Source: Octopus bimaculoides (taxonomy: Eukaryota). From it: a stretch of 64,000 nt of DNA. Within the stretch, counting starts at the first letter, position 1. Each line of letters opens with the position of its first letter. A model generated the notes under the pieces. It worked only from the letters and a program-made list of their open reading frames with translations. It was not told where the DNA came from and searched no databases. The position numbers and the translations under genes were made by a program. The DNA is taken from positions 3,939,938 through 4,003,937 of the forward strand of contig NC_068994.1 in NCBI RefSeq assembly GCF_001194135.2, written 5' to 3'. Below, one piece after another: positions 169 through 38,213 of this stretch.

Positions 169-468
169 TCATTGAATTGATAGTGTCTTACATAGGATGT
201 GTGCTGTTCCTATCAGGGCTATTTTTCGGACAGTGTGTAGTGTTGAGGGTCCAGATATAGCTTCTGTGTTTTTGTTCATATGTTTCTTTCTTATCATACC
301 CAATGCTCCAATAATTACTGGTATTATTTTCACCTTTGTGTCCCACATCTTGAACACTTCAATCTCGAGGTCTTTGCAGTTTGATAATTTCTTCACTTTG
401 GTCTGGACAATATTTTGGTCAGGAGGGACTGCAATATCTATCAGTAAATAGGTGGGTTTTTTTTTCAA
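169..468 (-). mobile_element. 3' fragment of an RLE-type non-LTR retrotransposon (R4/Dong-like), restriction-like endonuclease C-terminus
   Basis: The minus ORF reads LIDIAVPPDQNI..K..KL..CKDLEIEV.KMW..KVKIIPVIIGALG, the typical PD-(D/E)xK-type C-terminal endonuclease region of R4/Dong/NeSL-like LINEs. It is 5'-truncated at a (GAT)n tract near 470-500. The clade assignment comes from motif memory, not a search. Confidence 0.75.
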
Positions 469-2352: not shown

Positions 2353-2454
2353 AGTGCACTGTGTGACCTGTTTTGTTGAGAAGAGACAATCAGTCGGTCC
2401 GAGCCACATTCTTTAAGACTCCACTAGTTGTTGTTTCATGCTTTCATTATCATC
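2353..2454 (+). other. 5' UTR portion of the ZF-A coding exon
   Basis: Strong acceptor T-tract...CACTGTTTCAG ends at 2352. An in-frame TAG at 2425-2427 precedes the ATG at 2455, which is in a good context (ATC ATG G). Confidence 0.65.
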
Positions 2455-4800
2455 ATGGAGAGGTCTGCCGGGATTCCAATCTATGGTGAAATGTATGGCA
2501 TGCCATTCCATCACAGACTTCCTACACCAAGAATGCCAACCCTTAGTGACTTTTCTGGCAAGCATTTCGGCCAGGAACATGCTCTTGATACTCAGAGGAT
2601 GGCTCCGTTAGGGGGCAAGCAATTTCCTATTCATAGCTCACAGAGTTCTCACTCGCAGCAAAGGATGACACCGATTGCTGAGAAATCCAGCCATCACCAT
2701 AGCAACAGTTCTGGGAAGCACATTCACCATCGACATAGTTCTTCTCATTCACACAGCTCTCAAAGAATGTTAGAACCCGGTGAGAAGTCTATCCATAATA
2801 GCAGCAGTGACTCTGGGAAGCAGTACTCGCATGACACCCACAGGATCTCTCATGTGGCTGAGAAATCTTCCCATAGTTCCGGCAAGCATATGTCTCATGG
2901 AAGTTGTCAGGAGACTCCAAGGATGTCACATGTTCCAGAGAAAAACATTCACAACAGCATCTCTAGTAAACAGATCTCTTCCCACAGACATAACTTGGAG
3001 AAGGAGAGAATAGCATCACCAGTTGACAAACCAGACAACAACAGCAACAGTGACCTGTCTGGGAGCCAGTTCTCCCATGAGTCAACTATAGAGAGCCAGA
3101 GACTGCCACTGCCCTATATTGGTCAGACAGTGTTTCCTGGTAACAATATGTACAGCAGCCAGTATTCTCAGCCGTGTTACTTACCGACGACTGACAGAAT
3201 GCAGTCAAGCTTGGAGAGCGGACAATCATCTAAGGAGAGTTCTTCTCAAAAGAGCTCCACTGCTAGTATTGATAAATCATTCCATGGTGATGTGTCTCAA
3301 AAACAATATGGCCCGAACAAATTGTCGCCAACCCAACCCAAACCACAAGTATTGAGGCAGCTCTTCTGCGATTACTGTGGCAAGAAGTTTGCTCAGGAAT
3401 ATTTGATGCACATGCACCGAAGGAAACATACTGGAGAGAAACCGTTCCAGTGCGACGTCTGCAACAAACAGTTCTCTCGTAAAGATGTTATGAAAAGACA
3501 TAAGAAAAACCATATGGAGGGTCTTGTCCAATCCCCCAAAGTTCTTGGAAACAGCTACCAAGTTCCTATGCAAGAGAATTCTCAGATGGCAAAAAAACAG
3601 TTTACGCCTGATAAACTATTTCAATGTGATGTATGCATGAAATATTTCGGTACAAGGAATTATCTTGAAATTCACAAGAGAACTCATACTGGAGAGAAAC
3701 CATTCCAATGTGACTTCTGTATCCAAAAATTTGCTCGAAGAGACACGCTTCAAATCCATCGGCGCACCCATACCGGAGAGATGCCATTCCAATGTGAAGT
3801 CTGTCAAGAGAGATTTTCACAGCGAATAAAACTTCAGATTCATCAGAAAACACACATTTTGAAGAAACGGCACCAATGCGAATTTTGTCTGAAGCACTTT
3901 GCACAAAGATATTACCTTCAGATCCATCGACGACTGCACACCGGTGAGAAACTGATGCACTGCGACATTTGCTTGAAGAAATTCACTCAAAAACATTACT
4001 TAATCATTCACAGGAGAACCCACACGGGAGAAAAACCATTCCAGTGTGACTTCTGCATTCAGAAATTTGCTCGCAAAACAACTCTTCAAATTCACCGGAG
4101 AACTCACACGGGGGAAAAACCATTCCATTGTGAGATTTGTGACAAGAGGTTCGCTCAGAGCGATAAGTTGAGAGTTCATCGTCGCACCCATGCACCGAAG
4201 CGTCAGTACCAATGCGATATTTGTTTAAAGATGTTTGCCCAAAGACATTACCTTCATGTCCATCAGAGGTCTCACACCGGAGAGAAACCGTTCCAATGTG
4301 AAGTTTGTTTCAAACAGTTTGCTCAGAGAAACACATTACAGATACACAAGAGAACACACACAGGAGAGAAACCATTCCAGTGTGACGTCTGCCTCAAGAA
4401 CTTTGCCCATAAACATTATCTAAGATTACATAAGAGAACGCACACTGGAGAGAAACCATTTCAATGTGACTTCTGCCTGAAGCAGTTTGCTCAGAAAAAT
4501 TCTTTGAAGATCCATTGTCGAACACACACTGGTGAGAAACCGTATCAGTGTGAGATATGCTTCAAGTCTTTTGCTCAAAGACAATACCTGCGATTGCACA
4601 AAATAACACACAGTGGAGAGAAAGCTTATCATTGTGATATGTGCCCAAAACAGTTCACACGAGGTGATACTCTGCAGAGACACAAGAAAACTCACAATGG
4701 ACCCCAACCAAGCAGTAAACCTCACAAAGTGTCTGTTAATTCCAACAATAAAACAATTGAAGAGTTTCCACCAATGAGCACATACCTATGGCAGCTGTAG
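2455..4800 (+). CDS. C2H2 zinc-finger protein ZF-A: 781 aa, Ser/His-rich N-terminus, 2+13 fingers
   Basis: Uninterrupted ORF with 15 C-x2-C-x12-H-x3-H motifs and mostly TGEKPF linkers. The first in-frame ATG is 2455; the ORF track start at 2428 is a TTG. Confidence 0.95.
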   Translation: MERSAGIPIYGEMYGMPFHHRLPTPRMPTLSDFSGKHFGQEHALDTQRMAPLGGKQFPIHSSQSSHSQQRMTPIAEKSSHHHSNSSGKHIHHRHSSSHSHSSQRMLEPGEKSIHNSSSDSGKQYSHDTHRISHVAEKSSHSSGKHMSHGSCQETPRMSHVPEKNIHNSISSKQISSHRHNLEKERIASPVDKPDNNSNSDLSGSQFSHESTIESQRLPLPYIGQTVFPGNNMYSSQYSQPCYLPTTDRMQSSLESGQSSKESSSQKSSTASIDKSFHGDVSQKQYGPNKLSPTQPKPQVLRQLFCDYCGKKFAQEYLMHMHRRKHTGEKPFQCDVCNKQFSRKDVMKRHKKNHMEGLVQSPKVLGNSYQVPMQENSQMAKKQFTPDKLFQCDVCMKYFGTRNYLEIHKRTHTGEKPFQCDFCIQKFARRDTLQIHRRTHTGEMPFQCEVCQERFSQRIKLQIHQKTHILKKRHQCEFCLKHFAQRYYLQIHRRLHTGEKLMHCDICLKKFTQKHYLIIHRRTHTGEKPFQCDFCIQKFARKTTLQIHRRTHTGEKPFHCEICDKRFAQSDKLRVHRRTHAPKRQYQCDICLKMFAQRHYLHVHQRSHTGEKPFQCEVCFKQFAQRNTLQIHKRTHTGEKPFQCDVCLKNFAHKHYLRLHKRTHTGEKPFQCDFCLKQFAQKNSLKIHCRTHTGEKPYQCEICFKSFAQRQYLRLHKITHSGEKAYHCDMCPKQFTRGDTLQRHKKTHNGPQPSSKPHKVSVNSNNKTIEEFPPMSTYLWQL

Positions 4801-13495: not shown

Positions 13496-13667
13496 CAGGG
13501 CCATCTTAAGGTATGCACATATTGGGCAGTTACCCAGGGGCTTCCATGGGTGTAGGGGCCCAATATTACTCTTATGTATACTGTAACTCATTGTCAATAA
13601 ATATATGTTATTGGGCCAGTGCATTGATTAAACCCGGGGGCCTATAAATGCTGTTAAGACAACCTTG
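13496..13667. mobile_element. non-autonomous hAT (Tip100-like) MITE
   Basis: Imperfect TIRs CAGGGCCATCTTAA / TTAAGACAACCTTG, flanked by 8-mers GGTCACAT and AGTCACAG (6/8 identical), consistent with an old 8-bp TSD. Confidence 0.6.
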
Positions 13668-13904
13668 AGTCACAGTTGCTGGAATTAGGGAAAAATCCAA
13701 ATTGTGAGGGTTAAATAAGGTTATAAGAGTTTCAGAAGCTCGAAAGTGTCTCCCTGACACATGTCTCCTCAATTTGATGATGTGGCTTGAGAGGCTGACA
13801 AGATGATAATTGGCAGGTGATGTAAGTTGTCCTTTTTGAACAGGGGAATAATACTGGCAATTTTCCACTGTTCTGAGGGTAAGGGTATTAAGGGACAATT
13901 GGCA

Positions 13905-14640
13905 CTCGAACCAGTGGGATGTTAAAAGCACATCCGAGCGTGATCGTTGCCAGGGCCACGGATTGGCTCCCGTGCCGGTGACACGTGAAAAGCACCATTC
14001 GAGCGTGATCGTTGACAGCATCGCCTTACTGGCACTCTGGTGAATGCCTACCTGTACTCTAAATTCATTGCTGAACTCACAGGTAACTGTCACTTTACTA
14101 ACTGCTCCCTTGTACATGCTTGCACAGCGTTCCCAAGTCATCTGTCTACTTCTAGCTTCCTTAGGGGTCACCATGTCACAGAACTTTCACCTCTGTTGGT
14201 AACAGGCCTCTCTCTCAGAATGAAAAGCAGATTGTATGATACTTGTGTAGGAATAGCAATGCAACATGGCTGTGAAACTTGGGCTGTAAATGCAGAGGAC
14301 ATGTGAAGACTTGAAAGAAATGAAACAAGTATGCTTTAATGGACGTGCAATGTTAGTGTGCACGTATGACAAAGTACAGACATGCTTAGAGAAAAATTGG
14401 GTACAAGAGGCATTAGATGTGGAGTGGAGGCAAGAAGACTGTGCTGGTACAGTCATGTGATGCAGGTGGATAAGGACAGCTGTATAAAGATGTGTTAATC
14501 ACTAGACATGGAAGGAACCTGTAGAAGAGGAAGATCTGGGAAGATGTGGAATAAAGTGAAGACTGACCTCAAGATGTGGAGACCCTCAGATCAGATGATG
14601 GGGGACCAAGATGAATGGCATGATGCTGTACTTGAAAAGA
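13905..14640. mobile_element. rearranged RTE-clade LINE remnant
   Basis: 14150-14640(+) translates with stops to LSPLLVT.GLSLR.K.RLYDTCV..AM.HG.ETWAV..ED...RRL.WY.HVM...EGTC.RGR..K.W. 14035-14150(-) gives ASMYKGAVSKVTV..EFSNEFRVQVGIHQ, an RT segment. 13905-14035(+) matches the 3' UTR units at 30090-30380. Confidence 0.75.
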
Positions 14641-21613: not shown

Positions 21614-23197
21614 ATGTATTCGGCCCAGTCCAATGATAACTGCTTTGAGAATTGTGGAGGTGGAGGCCATAATCACTCTCAGTCTTTTTCACCACCAAAT
21701 GGCCATCACCACCACCATCATCACCACCACCATCACCATCACAACAACAACAACAATGGCTCGTTCATGTTTAAACCAAAAGGTAACGAAGCCCGAGACA
21801 AGCCGTTCAAATGTGATATCTGTCGTAAAGGTTTCACACTGAAAGCCTACCTGCAACGGCACCAGATGGCGCCAGAAGCTGGCAAACATTTCAACTGTAA
21901 CTTCTGCAGCAAAGTGTTTCCACAGCGAGACAGGTTAGAGAAACACGAGAGGACGCACACAGGTGAGAAGCCCTTTACCTGTGACATTTGCTCCAAGTCA
22001 TTCTCACAGAAGTCTCACCTGAACACACACAAAATGGTTCACCAGGGAATTAAACCAGCCAACCGTGTGAAACACAAGACCCTTCACAACCATTCTAGCA
22101 ACATGGCAATGATGGTTCCTCGAAAGCAGTTTCATAACCACGCCCACAATCATGGTCACACCCATACACACAACCACAGTCATAATCATGGCCACACCCA
22201 CTCTCACAACCATGGCCACACCCACAACCACGCCCACAACCATGGCCACAACCACAATCACAACCACAGTCACGGCCATTTTCACGGAAGCAATGTGTCG
22301 TTCCAGAATAGCGGACACTTTAACTCCAAAGCATTCCCGATTAACAGAGGAAATGAAGCTCGAGACAAGCCCTTTAAATGTGATGTATGTCGCAAGGGTT
22401 TTACTTTGAAGGCCTACCTACTCAGGCACCAACTTGCCCCTGAAACTGGCAAACACTTCCCTTGTCCGTTTTGCAGCAAAGTCTTCCCACAGAGGGACCG
22501 TCTTGAAAACCACCAAAGAACACACACCGGAGAGAAACCGTTCACGTGTAACCTTTGTGGGAAAAGTTTTGCGCAAAAGTCCCACCTGAATACACACAAG
22601 CACACACACAGTGGCGAGAAACCACACCAGTGTCCCATTTGTAATAAGTCTTTTGCCCAGAAGGACCACTTAAACAAGCACAGACGAACTCACACTGGCG
22701 AGAAACCTTTCCAGTGTACAATTTGTCTGAAAACCTTCTCCCAGAAGACCCACCTGAAGCAGCACAGTCGCATTCATGTCGGGGAAGAATTCTCTCAGTC
22801 CATGGGCCACAACCATCATCATCATCATGTCCATAATCATACCCAGCACCAAAACCATCACACCAACAGCAGCCCTTCGGAGTCTCAAATGACTGCTGAT
22901 AGTGGCCATGGAAACAAGCAGCAAACATCAGCCCTTGTGTCCAGTGGTGGTGGTGGTGGGACTACGACCCACCACCAGATGGCAGCCAGCTCTAGTTCGG
23001 CATCGACCTCGTCTGGGACAGCATCAACCCATCATTCATCGTCAATGAGGAAACAGCAACCACAGCACTCGGCTACGTCACCGTCTCCCACTGTCGTCAC
23101 ATCGGGGACCCTAGCTTCCAATTCTTGCTCTCATCAGATGACGCAGTCTTCATCATCACAGCATGCCGCTCCGCCACCGCCACCTCCAAGGAAGCAA

Positions 23198-23245
<48 letters not shown>

Positions 23246-23686
23246 CAGCCTCCCCCGCCACCACCACCGCAACAGCAACAACAACAACAACAGGCTCAAC
23301 ATCACCATCATCATCAACAGCAGTCCACACCATCGTCTTCCCCATCTTCATCGTGTCAAATGATGTCCCAACATCAAGCAGGACTCCGCAAATCGTCATC
23401 CTCATCGTCATCAATGTCTCCCGCAGCCTGTTCCCACCAGATGATGTCTCAACACGCTTCCATACGGCAGCAACCAGCCACTGTAGCATCGGCATCGATG
23501 AACTCCACATCTCCCCATCAACTTCCACAGAGACCTGACAATAACTACTGGAAACGCAGCTTCCCAGTTACCACAGGCTGGAACTCGGGTTGGTCCAACC
23601 AACCAGCTACCACAACGTATGGTGTCGGGCAAAGAAAGTGCGAGAGCCAAGAGGCTGTACGCTACATTCAGACTCTTTTACAATAA
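21614..23686 (+). CDS. C2H2 zinc-finger protein ZF-B: 690 aa, duplicated 3-finger module, (HX)26 tract, polyH/polyQ/polyP/Ser-rich C-terminus
   Basis: Uninterrupted ORF with ATG in GAA ATG T. Acceptor ...CTCCAAATTTTAG ends at 21585 (alternative AG at 21591). Six canonical fingers with TGEKP/SGEKP linkers plus two fingers lacking the second His. Confidence 0.93.
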
Positions 23687-36257: not shown

Positions 36258-37467
36258 TCATCCTTTCGGCGGAGGAGCCTTGTTCTGCTCCTGCGCCGCC
36301 GGTCCCCTGTTGTGAGTGCGTTCATGAACCTTCAGATTAGTCTGGTGAGCAAAACCTTTGTTACAAACCGTGCACGTGAACGTCTTGGCAGCTTCACCGG
36401 TGTGTAGCCTTTCGTGGCACTTCAGGTTGGTCTGATGGCTGAACGCATTCTCGCAGTACGCGCACTGGTAAGGTTTTTCACCTGTATGAGTTCTTTCATG
36501 ATCTCTCAGGTTCGTTTGGTGACTGAACGCTTTTGTGCAGAAACGACACTGATATGGTCGTACGCCTGTATGTGTTCTTTCGTGATCTCGCAGGTTAGTC
36601 TGATGGCTGAACGCATTCTGACAGTAGGAACAACTATAAGGTTTCTCGCCTGTGTGGGTCCTTTGGTGGTCCTTTAAATTCGTCTGGTGACTGAATGCTT
36701 TATCACAGTATGTACACTGAAAGGGTTTCACGCCGGTGTGGGTCCTTTCGTGGTCTTTGAGATTCGTCTGATGGCTGAAGGCCTTGTCGCAATAACTACA
36801 TCTATAGGGCTTGATACCAGTATGGATCCGCTGATGGTCCTTCAGGTTTGTCTGATGAGAAAACGCTTTACCACAGTATCCACAGTGGTACGGCTTGCAG
36901 CCCGTGTGCGTGCGCTCGTGGCTCTTCAGGTTGGTTTGGTGCGAGAAAGCCTTACTACATACGATGCACTTGAAAGGTTTTTCGCCAGTGTGTAAACGGA
37001 GATGTGATTTCAGGTTGGTCTGGTGCGCAAACATTTTCTCGCAGTAAACACATCGGAACGGTTTCTCGCCGGTGTGTGTGCGTAAATGGTCCTTGAGTCG
37101 AGCACGGATGGGGAATGCTTTACGGCAAAACGAACAATAGAAGTGCTTGCCATCGTCGTTCAGCGTAGCAGCATGCTGGTGATTCAGCAGGTCCGAACGT
37201 CGAGTGAAAGTTTTACGGCAAACGTCACACTTATGTTGCTTCTCCTCTTTCTCACTACTTGTTGGGTGGCGTTTGATCATCATCATGTTCATGGCCGCAT
37301 GCATGGTATGCATGGTGTGGATTGCATTCATGTTCATACCGACCATGCTGGCGTTCACTATCATGCCTGATGGCATACTCATATTCATTGTAGTGGCTGC
37401 AGAACTTGTCGAAGGCGGCTGTGGGTGGGGTGCTTGTTGTTGTTGCTGTTGCTGTTGCTGCTGCTGT

Positions 37468-37511
<44 letters not shown>

Positions 37512-37532
37512 CTGCTGTTGTTGTTGTTGTTG

Positions 37533-37563
<31 letters not shown>

Positions 37564-38213
37564 TGTTGTTGTTGTTGCTGTTGCGGGGGAGGAGGGGCTA
37601 TGTTTACATTGCTTGTGATGCTCGTGGCTGGCGGCATGTTCGCAGCGGTGTTAGGACTCGGTCCGAGGTTTACGTTGAGGCCCGGGTTAACATTTGTGTT
37701 CATGTTTGTGTTGTTCAAACCAACACCAAGGCCCTTACCACTGGTCCCACCAACACCACCTCCCGAATGAAGGGCATTCTGGTTAACCCCTCCAATATGC
37801 CCGTGGTGATGGTGGTGGTGATGATGATGATGTTGGTGGTTGCCAGTGCCTCCGCCGCCGGCACCGCCTCCACTACCACTGCAGTTGGTGTGTCGGGCGT
37901 GACTGTGGGCATGGTGGTCATGGTGCCCACCGTGGGCGTGGCTGTGGGCGTGACTGTGAGCATGGTGTGTGTGCCCAGCAGAAGGGTGTGGCCCCTTCAG
38001 TAAGTTGTCCCTGTAGAACACGTCGTTGCCTCTCATGTGTTCCATGCTGGTCGTCTGTCTACCGACATTCGTGCCACCACTGCTGTTGGTGACACGGTTC
38101 CCTGCGCCACCCCTTCCACCACTGCTGCTTGTATCTTGCCCTGCATTGGGATTATTTCCAGGGGGAACTAAACCAGTCCCAGAAGATGAATACATAGGTT
38201 GTAATGACTCCAT
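36258..38213 (-). CDS. C2H2 zinc-finger protein ZF-C: 651 aa, Gly/His/Asn-rich N-terminus, Q50, 1 atypical plus 10 canonical fingers
   Basis: Uninterrupted ORF. Acceptor TTTCCCCTCACCTCACCAAATTCTACAG lies one base before the ATG, so a short coding extension from an upstream exon cannot be excluded. Confidence 0.94.
37434..37583 (-). repeat. coding (CAA/CAG)50 polyglutamine tract of ZF-C
   Basis: 150 nt of mixed CAA/CAG codons between PPPP and APHPQ. Confidence 0.9.

What the first reader, a model, noticed from the sequence alone, without database searches (positions are those of the whole stretch)
2545..3117. ZF-A N-terminus appears to be an array of fossil zinc fingers that lost their Cys ligands
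Residues at 2545-2625 read SDFSGKHFGQEHALDTQRMAPLGGKQF. This aligns gap-free with a finger plus linker such as this gene's own CDYCGKKFAQEYLMHMHRRKHTGEKPF, with all four ligands replaced (S, S, Q, P). The Ser codons AGT and TCT are each one base from TGT. The unit end then recurs five more times about every 25-40 aa: QRMTPIAEKS, QRMLEPGEKS, HRISHVAEKS (both His kept; compare HRRTHTGEKP), PRMSHVPEKN and ERIASPVDKP. Several are followed by S-x-x-S-G-K-[HQ]-[IYM], e.g. SNSSGKHI (AGC..TCT). The frame stayed open while the metal ligands were lost, suggesting an old finger array was recycled into a Ser/His-rich, probably disordered effector region.
Basis: partly seen in the sequence, partly recalled or inferred. 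Interest (0 to 1): 0.7.

Follow-up and report, generated by a model that had tools for sequence, protein, structure and literature searches.

The report
Zinc-less finger relics amplified in octopus ZNF
The front third of an Octopus bimaculoides zinc-finger gene is built from repeats that are recognisable relics of zinc fingers without their metal-binding residues, but most copies arose by copying one already-dead relic, not by the decay of a working finger array.

Summary
ZF-A (window 2455-4800, +) is a single-exon gene for a 781-aa protein of Octopus bimaculoides. It has a 302-aa Ser/His-rich front part and 15 canonical C2H2 fingers. The front part carries about ten units, 22-34 aa each, mean period 28.6 aa.

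With the four ligand columns left out, unit 1 scores +21.6 bits against the gene's own fingers; the shuffle maximum is -21.6±4.9. Each of the six clearest units is finger-like in register (z 2.6-5.7). A profile built only from cephalopod pre-finger units aligns to the real fingers column for column (hhalign 96.5%).

The paralogue ZNF431, ~200 kb away, and a cuttlefish relative carry far fewer relics at the same place: ZNF431 three, and one where ZF-A has seven. So the ligands were lost before octopus and cuttlefish split. ZF-A aa 59-198 is a later tandem amplification of one Cys-less unit; its copies share the same Ser codon classes and are each other's nearest neighbours.

A third paralogue group keeps long relic arrays, some with Cys, that are 89% identical between Octopus and Argonauta. 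No ZF-A orthologue was available, and the function is untested. This is a new variant of the known "degenerate finger" phenomenon.

The parts
2455..4800 (+). ZF-A coding sequence: one exon, 781 aa plus stop. O. bimaculoides GCA_001194135.2, chromosome CM046614.1, about 3.94 Mb.
   Evidence: ORF found. The exact 781-aa product is on record for that assembly.
2485..2544 (+). Unit 0, aa 11-30, GEMYGMPFHHRLPTPRMPTL. A shortened relic that corresponds to GDMYSKQFAQRS...QRISH of ZNF431.
   Evidence: The ZNF431 counterpart DMYSKQFAQRS scores 8.8 bits against the ligand-masked finger HMM.
2545..2628 (+). Unit 1, aa 31-58, SDFSGKHFGQEHALDTQRMAPLGGKQFP. The clearest relic, gap-free against a finger plus linker. 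The ligands are replaced by S, S, Q and P.
   Evidence: +21.6 bits with the ligand columns excluded, against a null maximum of -21.6±4.9. z = 5.7. Its best matches among 189,293 windows of 28 aa are the family's first canonical finger.
2629..2700 (+). Unit 2, aa 59-82, IHSSQSSHSQQRMTPIAEKSSHHH. The head is deleted; the tail and linker are kept.
   Evidence: 7.6 bits against the unit HMM.
2701..2802 (+). Unit 3, aa 83-116, SNSSGKHI-HHRHSSSHSHSS-QRMLEPGEKSIHNS. It carries a 4-aa Ser/His insertion.
   Evidence: z = 5.0 in register.
2803..2868 (+). Unit 4, aa 117-138, SSDSGKQYSHDTHRISHVAEKS. It has a 4-aa deletion and keeps both His positions.
   Evidence: z = 5.0.
2869..2952 (+). Unit 5, aa 139-166, SHSSGKHMSHGSCQETPRMSHVPEKNIH. 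It is 28 aa and gap-free.
   Evidence: z = 3.7.
2953..3048 (+). Unit 6, aa 167-198, NSISSKQISSHRHNLEKERIASPVDKPDNNSN.
   Evidence: z = 5.1.
3049..3141 (+). Unit 7, aa 199-229, SDLSGSQFSHESTIESQRLPLPYIGQTVFPG. Its tail corresponds to AQRIQHISQNVFP of ZNF431.
   Evidence: z = 2.6.
3142..3225 (+). Unit 8, aa 230-257, NNMYSSQYSQPCYLPTTDRMQSSLESGQ. An old-type relic with Tyr at the second Cys position, shared with ZNF431 (TDVYGNPFTQNCYFPLTPERMQ).
   Evidence: Weak HMM hit of 4.9 bits.
3286..3366 (+). Possible last relic, aa 278-304, GDVSQKQYGPNKLSPTQPKPQVLRQLF. It lies 27 aa before Cys305, so it is nearly in phase with the finger array.
   Evidence: Read by eye, plus a weak BLASTP match to SIYGDMYSKQF. 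Not significant on its own.
3367..4695 (+). Fifteen canonical C2H2 fingers: aa 305-357 (two fingers), a 33-aa spacer, then aa 391-747 (thirteen fingers).
   Evidence: Pfam zf-C2H2, 15 stretches, E = 4.8e-49. Finger list.

Best explanation
ZF-A encodes a DNA-binding protein with 15 fingers. Its 302-aa front part is made of zinc-less relics of C2H2 fingers.

The unit is S-x2-S-G-K-[HQ]-hydrophobic-x8-12-[QH]-R-[MI]-x4-[ED]-K-[SP]. It keeps the non-ligand landmarks of a finger plus linker at finger spacing: K6, F8, R18 and E24-K25. It has Ser or Tyr where the Cys ligands were, and Gln, Pro or Ser where the His ligands were.

Shown here:
1. The relic is older than the gene. A short set of relics (units 0, 1 and 8) stands at the same place in the paralogue ZNF431. 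Its cuttlefish relative, whose annotated start differs, keeps units 1 and 8.
2. A third paralogue group (ZNF45-like) has long arrays of the same relics.

Inferred: in the ZF-A lineage, one unit that had already lost its Cys (the unit-1 type) was copied in tandem about five times (aa 59-198). The copies then picked up Ser/His simple-sequence insertions.

Inferred with low confidence: the relics no longer bind zinc or fold. They now form a disordered, Ser/His-rich tail that serves as an interaction or regulatory (effector) region for the finger array. Purifying selection on the same relics in a paralogue suggests that the motif itself is used.
For: Finger origin:
- Unit 1 scores +21.6 bits against the gene's own fingers with the ligand columns removed. 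The null maximum is -21.6±4.9, for both residue shuffles and column-permuted matrices.
- All six aligned ZF-A units are finger-like in the register fixed by unit-to-unit alignment: z 2.6-5.7, p ≤ 0.0125.
- hhalign of 20 pre-finger units against ZF-A's fingers gives probability 96.5% and score 34.5, aligning columns 2-28 to 2-28. The column-shuffle null has mean 7.0.
- ZF-A units alone score 20.7 (null maximum 15.4). Without unit 1 they score 15.1 (null maximum 14.5).
- A profile that contains no ZF-A sequence and no canonical finger hits ZF-A's real fingers in register, up to 20.8 bits with independent E = 2.2e-5.
- The profile built from all 20 pre-finger units scores 2279 non-cephalopod fingers at a mean of 2.6, against -2.1 for their shuffles.

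The relic is older than the gene:
- ZF-A aa 1-58 aligns with ZNF431 aa 1-63 (BLASTP E = 3e-6). ZF-A aa 199-260 aligns with ZNF431 aa 35-90.
- The same motifs are present in Acanthosepion pharaonis and in two unnamed cephalopod assemblies.

Amplification after ligand loss:
- Within ZF-A the units are each other's nearest neighbours, whereas ZNF45-like units pair position by position across species.
- The Ser at position 1 is AGY in 5 of 6 units. The Ser at position 4 is TCY in all 7 units that have Ser there.

The units are homologous across paralogue groups:
- Domain-level HMM sums are 25.8 (null 0.3±1.0), 15.7 and 12.0, all above every one of 1000 shuffles.

Selection on relics:
- Between O. 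vulgaris and Argonauta, the relics are 89% identical, the fingers 92%, and the rest of the front part 56-68%.

Disorder:
- In the AlphaFold2 model, aa 1-295 have pLDDT 36-49 and no secondary structure, while the two real fingers in the same model reach 77-87.
Against: - No orthologue of ZF-A was available, so the date of the amplification and the selection on ZF-A's own units are unknown.
- Under a scan-wide null, only unit 1 is individually significant. For aa 59-300, p is 0.008-0.09.
- Pfam zf-C2H2 finds nothing in aa 1-302, even at E ≤ 10.
- Whole-sequence HMMER scores between paralogue groups do not exceed shuffles. Only the domain-level statistics do.
- I chose the seed units with the finger register in mind.
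- The units are copies of one another, so their z-scores are not independent.
- Concerted evolution could mimic a recent amplification.
- The disorder calls rest on AlphaFold2 runs with one and with four sequences.
Confidence: 0.7

Rival explanations
1. One reading: ZF-A once had about seven more working fingers at its N-terminus. Each lost its ligands independently, in place.
For: - The units are finger-like in register.
- The mean period is 28.6 aa.
- Unit 4 keeps both His positions and unit 5 keeps the second.
- ZNF45-like paralogues have long relic arrays in which a few Cys remain.
Against: - ZNF431 and a cuttlefish relative have only one unit where ZF-A has seven, and that unit already lacks Cys.
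- All ZF-A units share the same replacement residues and the same Ser codon classes.
- ZF-A units cluster with each other.
- Independent decay should give a mix of replacements.
Confidence: 0.08
2. The ancestor of the whole family already had a long array of relics. ZF-A kept it and homogenised it by concerted evolution, while the ZNF431 lineage deleted most units.
For: - The ZNF45-like group has eight or more relic units with position-by-position correspondence across species, so long relic arrays are old in that group.
- Nucleotide identity between ZF-A unit tails is only 37-70%, so the copies are not recent.
Against: - ZF-A's inner units are all of the unit-1 type (S..SGK[HQ]). None is of the Tyr type seen in other arrays.
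- The ZNF431-type short N-terminus is found in both octopus and cuttlefish.
- The closest relative of ZF-A aa 1-400 in the database (P0038) has only one reduced unit.
Confidence: 0.15
3. The repeat arose from simple-sequence slippage in a Ser/His-rich tract, and it resembles fingers only by chance.
For: - Ser makes up 21% and His 9% of the region.
- Unit 3 contains an HHRHSSSHSHSS run.
- Pfam sees no finger in the region.
Against: - Tandem Repeats Finder reports no DNA tandem repeat in 2455-3360.
- Every shuffle control is exceeded.
- The unit is homologous to conserved motifs in other proteins, and those motifs hit real fingers in register.
Confidence: 0.03

Closest known systems
Degenerate C2H2 fingers of vertebrate KRAB-ZNF proteins (described in PMC2865497 and PMC2667407)
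   Same: These are finger-length units inside an open reading frame that keep the finger framework but lack one or more Cys/His. They lie next to intact arrays in fast-expanding ZNF families. An earlier round of my unit profile (iteration 4, which by then also included a few vertebrate segments) picked up such segments in vertebrate proteins, for example YGKTFHQGSNLRSHQRSHIGEK.
   Different: - Here all four ligands are usually gone.
- The relics form a separate N-terminal module about 75 aa away from the array.
- They are conserved between octopus and cuttlefish.
- One relic was itself amplified after it lost its ligands.
Lineage-specific N-terminal modules of poly-ZNF families: KRAB, SCAN, ZAD and the 28-aa FiNZ domain of cyprinid fish (PMC10547256)
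   Same: A short, conserved N-terminal sequence joined to a long finger array, in a family that expanded in one lineage.
   Different: - ZF-A matches none of the Pfam models, which cover KRAB, SCAN, BTB and ZAD. FiNZ was not compared.
- FiNZ is single-copy, Glu-rich and reported to have no similarity to known domains.
- The octopus module is repeated, Ser/His-rich and derived from fingers.
- No repressor or activator function has been tested.
The cephalopod C2H2 ZNF expansion (Albertin et al. 2015, as cited in PMC10547256; also PMC12513265)
   Same: ZF-A sits in a cluster of C2H2 genes on an O. bimaculoides chromosome, as those papers describe for the expansion.
   Different: PMC12513265 contains none of the words degenerate, N-terminal or effector. 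I found no description of the relic module in the papers I read.

Membership tests
Functional C2H2 zinc finger (Pfam PF00096) | C-x2-4-C ... H-x3-5-H ligand tetrad | tested here: not met
   No N-terminal unit has either Cys. Only unit 4 has both His positions, and unit 5 has the second.
Functional C2H2 zinc finger (Pfam PF00096) | Match to the Pfam zf-C2H2 model | tested here: not met
   No Pfam family matches aa 1-302 at E ≤ 10. The rest of the protein gives 15 stretches.
Functional C2H2 zinc finger (Pfam PF00096) | Beta-beta-alpha fold | tested here: inconclusive
   AlphaFold2 without an alignment gives no secondary structure and pLDDT below 50 for aa 1-295. The real fingers in the same model reach 77-87.
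Relic (degenerate) C2H2 finger | Non-ligand framework (K6, F8, R18, E24-K25 linker) in finger register, better than shuffles | tested here: met
Relic (degenerate) C2H2 finger | Finger-length periodicity of about 28 aa | tested here: met
   The spacings of the nine xR[MIL] anchors from aa 25 are 22, 22, 34, 26, 26, 29, 31 and 32 aa. From aa 47 to 247 the mean is 28.6. Units 1 and 5 are exactly 28 aa and align without gaps.
Relic (degenerate) C2H2 finger | Relatives with intermediate states that keep some ligands | tested here: met
   ZNF45-like paralogues have CTEICGKDC..., SDRCQKEYAHR...THTLSGEKFY and CDTYPKDY. These are paralogues, not orthologues, of ZF-A.
Known N-terminal ZNF effector domains (KRAB, SCAN, BTB, ZAD) | Match to the Pfam model | tested here: not met
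Simple-sequence (slippage) repeat | Tandem repeat detectable at the DNA level, with high copy identity | tested here: not met
   Tandem Repeats Finder reports nothing in 2455-3360. Nucleotide identity between unit tails is 11-21 of 30 bases.

The most novel reading that the evidence does not exclude
The zinc-less finger relics form a cephalopod-specific N-terminal effector module of a C2H2 subfamily. It was born by exaptation of fingers and kept under selection for more than the octopus-cuttlefish divergence. Its copy number is tuned by tandem amplification, as in ZF-A. Functionally it would parallel KRAB or FiNZ, but it would have arisen from the DNA-binding domain itself.
Probability: 0.25. 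Interest if true: 0.7.

Novelty: new variant of a known kind. Interest (0 to 1): 0.45.

Why it matters
Octopus has one of the largest C2H2 zinc-finger expansions known. The cephalopod study I read (PMC12513265) names no partner or effector domain for these proteins.

If the relic module is functional, it would show that a DNA-binding repeat can be recycled into a non-DNA-binding tail and then re-amplified. It would also give a sequence handle (a profile) for sorting cephalopod ZNF subfamilies.

If it is only neutral debris, it is still a clean, datable example of domain decay followed by repeat growth within one open reading frame.

Tried and rejected
- **Pfam scan of aa 1-302 at E ≤ 10:** nothing found.
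- **Database searches with the N-terminus alone:** no hit among 5.8 billion proteins or among 1.84 billion representatives.
- **Search with aa 1-400:** only the distant P0038 plus generic ZNFs.
- **The window's own protein:** not in the searchable collection. It is on record for the assembly.
- **Tandem Repeats Finder and DNA repeat search:** no DNA-level array in the N-terminal part. Only short matches of 65-86% identity.
- **Whole-sequence HMMER scores for cross-family unit homology:** these fell within the shuffle range. I think this is an effect of the composition correction. Domain-level statistics were used instead.
- **A special link between unit 1's tail (QRMAPLGGKQF) and the atypical ZF-B finger (HQMAPEAGKHF):** rejected. 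That finger scores 30-31, no better than ZF-B's ordinary fingers at 32-36.
- **AlphaFold2 of the conserved relics of the O. vulgaris paralogue, with a four-sequence alignment:** mean pLDDT 44.8. Only low-confidence helices, so no fold can be claimed.
- **Identifying the species behind the Logan and ENA samples:** failed.
- **The first iterated unit profile:** it drew in vertebrate degenerate fingers. I rebuilt it from cephalopod sequences only.
Full report
**What is there**

The window comes from Octopus bimaculoides, assembly GCA_001194135.2, chromosome CM046614.1, at about 3.94 Mb. The exact 781-aa product of window 2455-4800 (+) is on record for that assembly. The gene, ZF-A, is one uninterrupted reading frame.

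Pfam finds 15 C2H2 fingers from aa 305 onward and nothing at all in aa 1-302, even at E ≤ 10. The front part is 21% Ser and 9% His. Its frame has no stop in 302 codons. The other five frames have 6-28 stops, and none of 2000 base shuffles is stop-free.

**Check of the observation**

The repeat is not a chance pattern:
- R[MIL]x4[ED]K occurs 5 times, against 0.006 expected.
- S..SGK occurs 4 times, against 0.049 expected.
- The finger-spaced pattern G[KS]x[FYIM]x9R[MIL] occurs 3 times, against 0.004 expected.
- The best off-diagonal self-alignment scores 92, against 40.8±6.2 for global shuffles and 55.1±8.8 for block shuffles.

The xR[MIL] anchors lie at aa 25, 47, 69, 103, 129, 155, 184, 215 and 247. 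From aa 47 to 247 the mean period is 28.6 aa, and a finger plus linker is 28 aa.

At the DNA level there is no tandem array. The copies share only 37-70% of bases in their best-conserved 30 nt. The duplications are therefore old.

**Is the unit a dead finger?**

I scored the front part against a matrix made from the gene's own 15 fingers, leaving out the four ligand columns.
- Unit 1 (aa 31-58) scores +21.6 bits. The best window in 2000 residue shuffles averages -21.6±4.9, and 2000 column-permuted matrices give -21.2±5.0.
- The next-best windows (aa 139, 168 and 199) fall in the predicted register. Their scores equal the null maximum, so they are not individually significant in a scan.
- A ligand-masked finger HMM gives p < 0.001 for aa 1-300 but only 0.008-0.09 for aa 59-300.

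A sharper test fixes the register from unit-to-unit alignment alone and compares each unit with 2374 canonical fingers. Permuting each unit's residues among its columns gives the null. The six ZF-A units reach z = 5.7, 5.0, 5.0, 3.7, 5.1 and 2.6.

Profile against profile (hhalign) gives the following:
- Twenty pre-finger units from cephalopod proteins align to ZF-A's fingers over columns 2-28 to 2-28, with probability 96.5% and score 34.5. The column-shuffle mean is 7.0.
- ZF-A units alone score 20.7 (null maximum 15.4).
- ZF-A units without unit 1 score 15.1 (null maximum 14.5).

A profile that holds no ZF-A sequence and no canonical finger, run on the six-frame translation of the window, hits ZF-A's real fingers in register. 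The best hit is 20.8 bits with independent E = 2.2e-5. The profile built from all 20 pre-finger units scores 2279 fingers of non-cephalopod proteins at a mean of 2.6, against -2.1 for their shuffles. I conclude that the unit descends from a finger plus linker.

**Relatives change the history**

The N-terminus alone finds nothing in the large protein collections. The full protein finds cephalopod relatives.

*ZNF431 group.* ZNF431 of O. bimaculoides (P0007) lies about 200 kb away on the same chromosome, so it is a paralogue. Its start is:

MERGSGMSIYGDMYSKQFAQRSGSSQTQRISHSSSLPGGKQISMGHHTLDAQRIQHISQNVFPTDVYGNPFTQNCYFPLTPERMQ

- ZF-A aa 1-58 aligns with ZNF431 aa 1-63 (BLASTP E = 3e-6).
- ZF-A aa 199-260 aligns with ZNF431 aa 35-90.
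- The same short arrangement is found in Acanthosepion pharaonis (P0031), whose annotated start differs so that only units 1 and 8 are seen, and in two unnamed assemblies (P0012, P0022).
- These proteins have three relics (units 0, 1 and 8), all already without Cys.
- ZF-A has about five more copies of the unit-1 type between the same flanks (aa 59-198).

*ZNF45-like group.* A second paralogue group comprises ZNF45-like of O. vulgaris and Argonauta hians (P0026, P0027) and P0021 from an unnamed sample. It has eight or more units of the form xD[IL]YSK[ED][FY]xQRHS...QRMxxxxEK.
- An example is SNLYSKELAQRHSYLSQRMSSGLEKTVQ, which is exactly 28 aa.
- Some units keep Cys: CTEICGKDC, SDRCQKEYAHR...THTLSGEKFY.
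- Unit profiles of the two kinds find each other above all 1000 shuffles at the domain level. The sums are 25.8 against 0.3±1.0, then 15.7 and 12.0. Whole-sequence scores do not separate from shuffles.

**Copying after death, not parallel decay**

- Within ZF-A, units 3-7 have other ZF-A units as nearest neighbours. Units of the ZNF45-like group instead pair with the unit at the same position in another species.
- The Ser at the first Cys position is AGY in 5 of 6 units. The Ser at the second Cys position is TCY in all 7 units that have Ser there.
- These two Ser codon classes cannot interconvert in one step. A shared pattern therefore points to copies of one template. Independent loss of Cys should give a mixture.
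- P0038, the closest database relative of ZF-A aa 1-400, has a single reduced unit.

I therefore read aa 59-198 as a tandem amplification of a relic that was already Cys-less, later padded by Ser/His runs such as HHRHSSSHSHSS in unit 3. The alternative is that ZF-A kept an ancestral long array and homogenised it. That is not excluded, because no ZF-A orthologue could be examined.

**What it may do**

- AlphaFold2 run on the single sequence gives pLDDT 36-49 and no secondary structure for aa 1-295. The two real fingers in the same model reach 77-87.
- The conserved relics of the O. vulgaris paralogue, modelled with a four-sequence alignment, give mean pLDDT 44.8 and only low-confidence helices.
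- Between O. vulgaris and Argonauta, the three clean relics are 89% identical, the fingers 92%, and the rest of the front part 56-68%.
- The columns invariant across that group are the old finger framework positions: Y at the second Cys position, then K, F/L, QRM and EK.

This argues that the relic motif is used, at least in that paralogue. For ZF-A itself, a role as a disordered interaction or regulatory tail is inference only.

**Comparison with what is known**

Degenerate fingers are well known in vertebrate KRAB-ZNF genes (PMC2865497, PMC2667407). N-terminal modules such as KRAB or the 28-aa FiNZ mark other lineage-specific ZNF expansions (PMC10547256). A recent study of cephalopod C2H2 expansions does not mention degenerate fingers or N-terminal regions.

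The octopus case differs in four ways: all ligands are lost, the relics form a separate module, the module is conserved across coleoid cephalopods, and one relic was re-amplified. I rate it a new variant of a known kind, with interest 0.45.

**Limits**

- No ZF-A orthologue was available.
- The units are not independent samples.
- I chose the seed units knowing the finger register.
- The structure predictions rest on shallow alignments.
- No functional data exist.

Noticed in passing
window 21614-23686 (+): ZF-B is a 690-aa C2H2 gene with an internal duplication of about 190 aa. Each copy begins with an atypical finger whose fourth ligand position is Pro (CDICRKGFTLKAYLQRHQMAPEAGKHF). The protein also has an HNHxHNHGH His-rich tract and long polyQ/polyP runs.
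   Followed up: partly
window 36258-38213 (-): ZF-C is a 651-aa C2H2 gene with a polyQ run of about 60 residues and a His-rich tract. Most of its ten canonical fingers have almost identical recognition helices (FSHQTNLKDHERTHTG), which suggests recent finger duplication or homogenisation.
   Followed up: no
window 2545-2628 compared with 3367-3450: Among 189,293 windows of 28 aa from all fetched proteins, ZF-A unit 1 is most similar to the family's first canonical finger (CDFCGK.F.QEYLM..HRR.HTGE.PF). It is more similar to that finger than ZNF431's own unit 1 is. This could reflect an old duplication of finger 1 or gene conversion; it is unresolved.
   Followed up: partly
window 3286-3366: aa 278-304 (GDVSQKQYGPNKLSPTQPKPQVLRQLF) lies 27 aa before the first Cys of the array, so it is nearly in phase with it. 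This may be one more relic. It is not significant on its own.
   Followed up: partly
window 2438-2605: An out-of-frame ATG lies 17 nt upstream of the ZF-A start. It opens a reading frame of about 55 codons that overlaps the start codon.
   Followed up: no
window 169-468 (-) and 13608-14174 (-): Two ORFs look like retroelement fragments by eye, but neither has a Pfam hit at E ≤ 0.01.
   Followed up: partly
window about 55.8-56.4 kb, 60.0-60.4 kb and 62.5-63.4 kb: Runs of N (assembly gaps) flanked by TA/CA microsatellites. ORFs listed there are artefacts.
   Followed up: no
L002 (O. bimaculoides CM046614.1, 3,721,864-3,744,230): The paralogue ZNF431 lies about 200 kb from ZF-A on the same chromosome, next to a trypsin-like gene. 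The ZNF cluster therefore extends well beyond the window.
   Followed up: no
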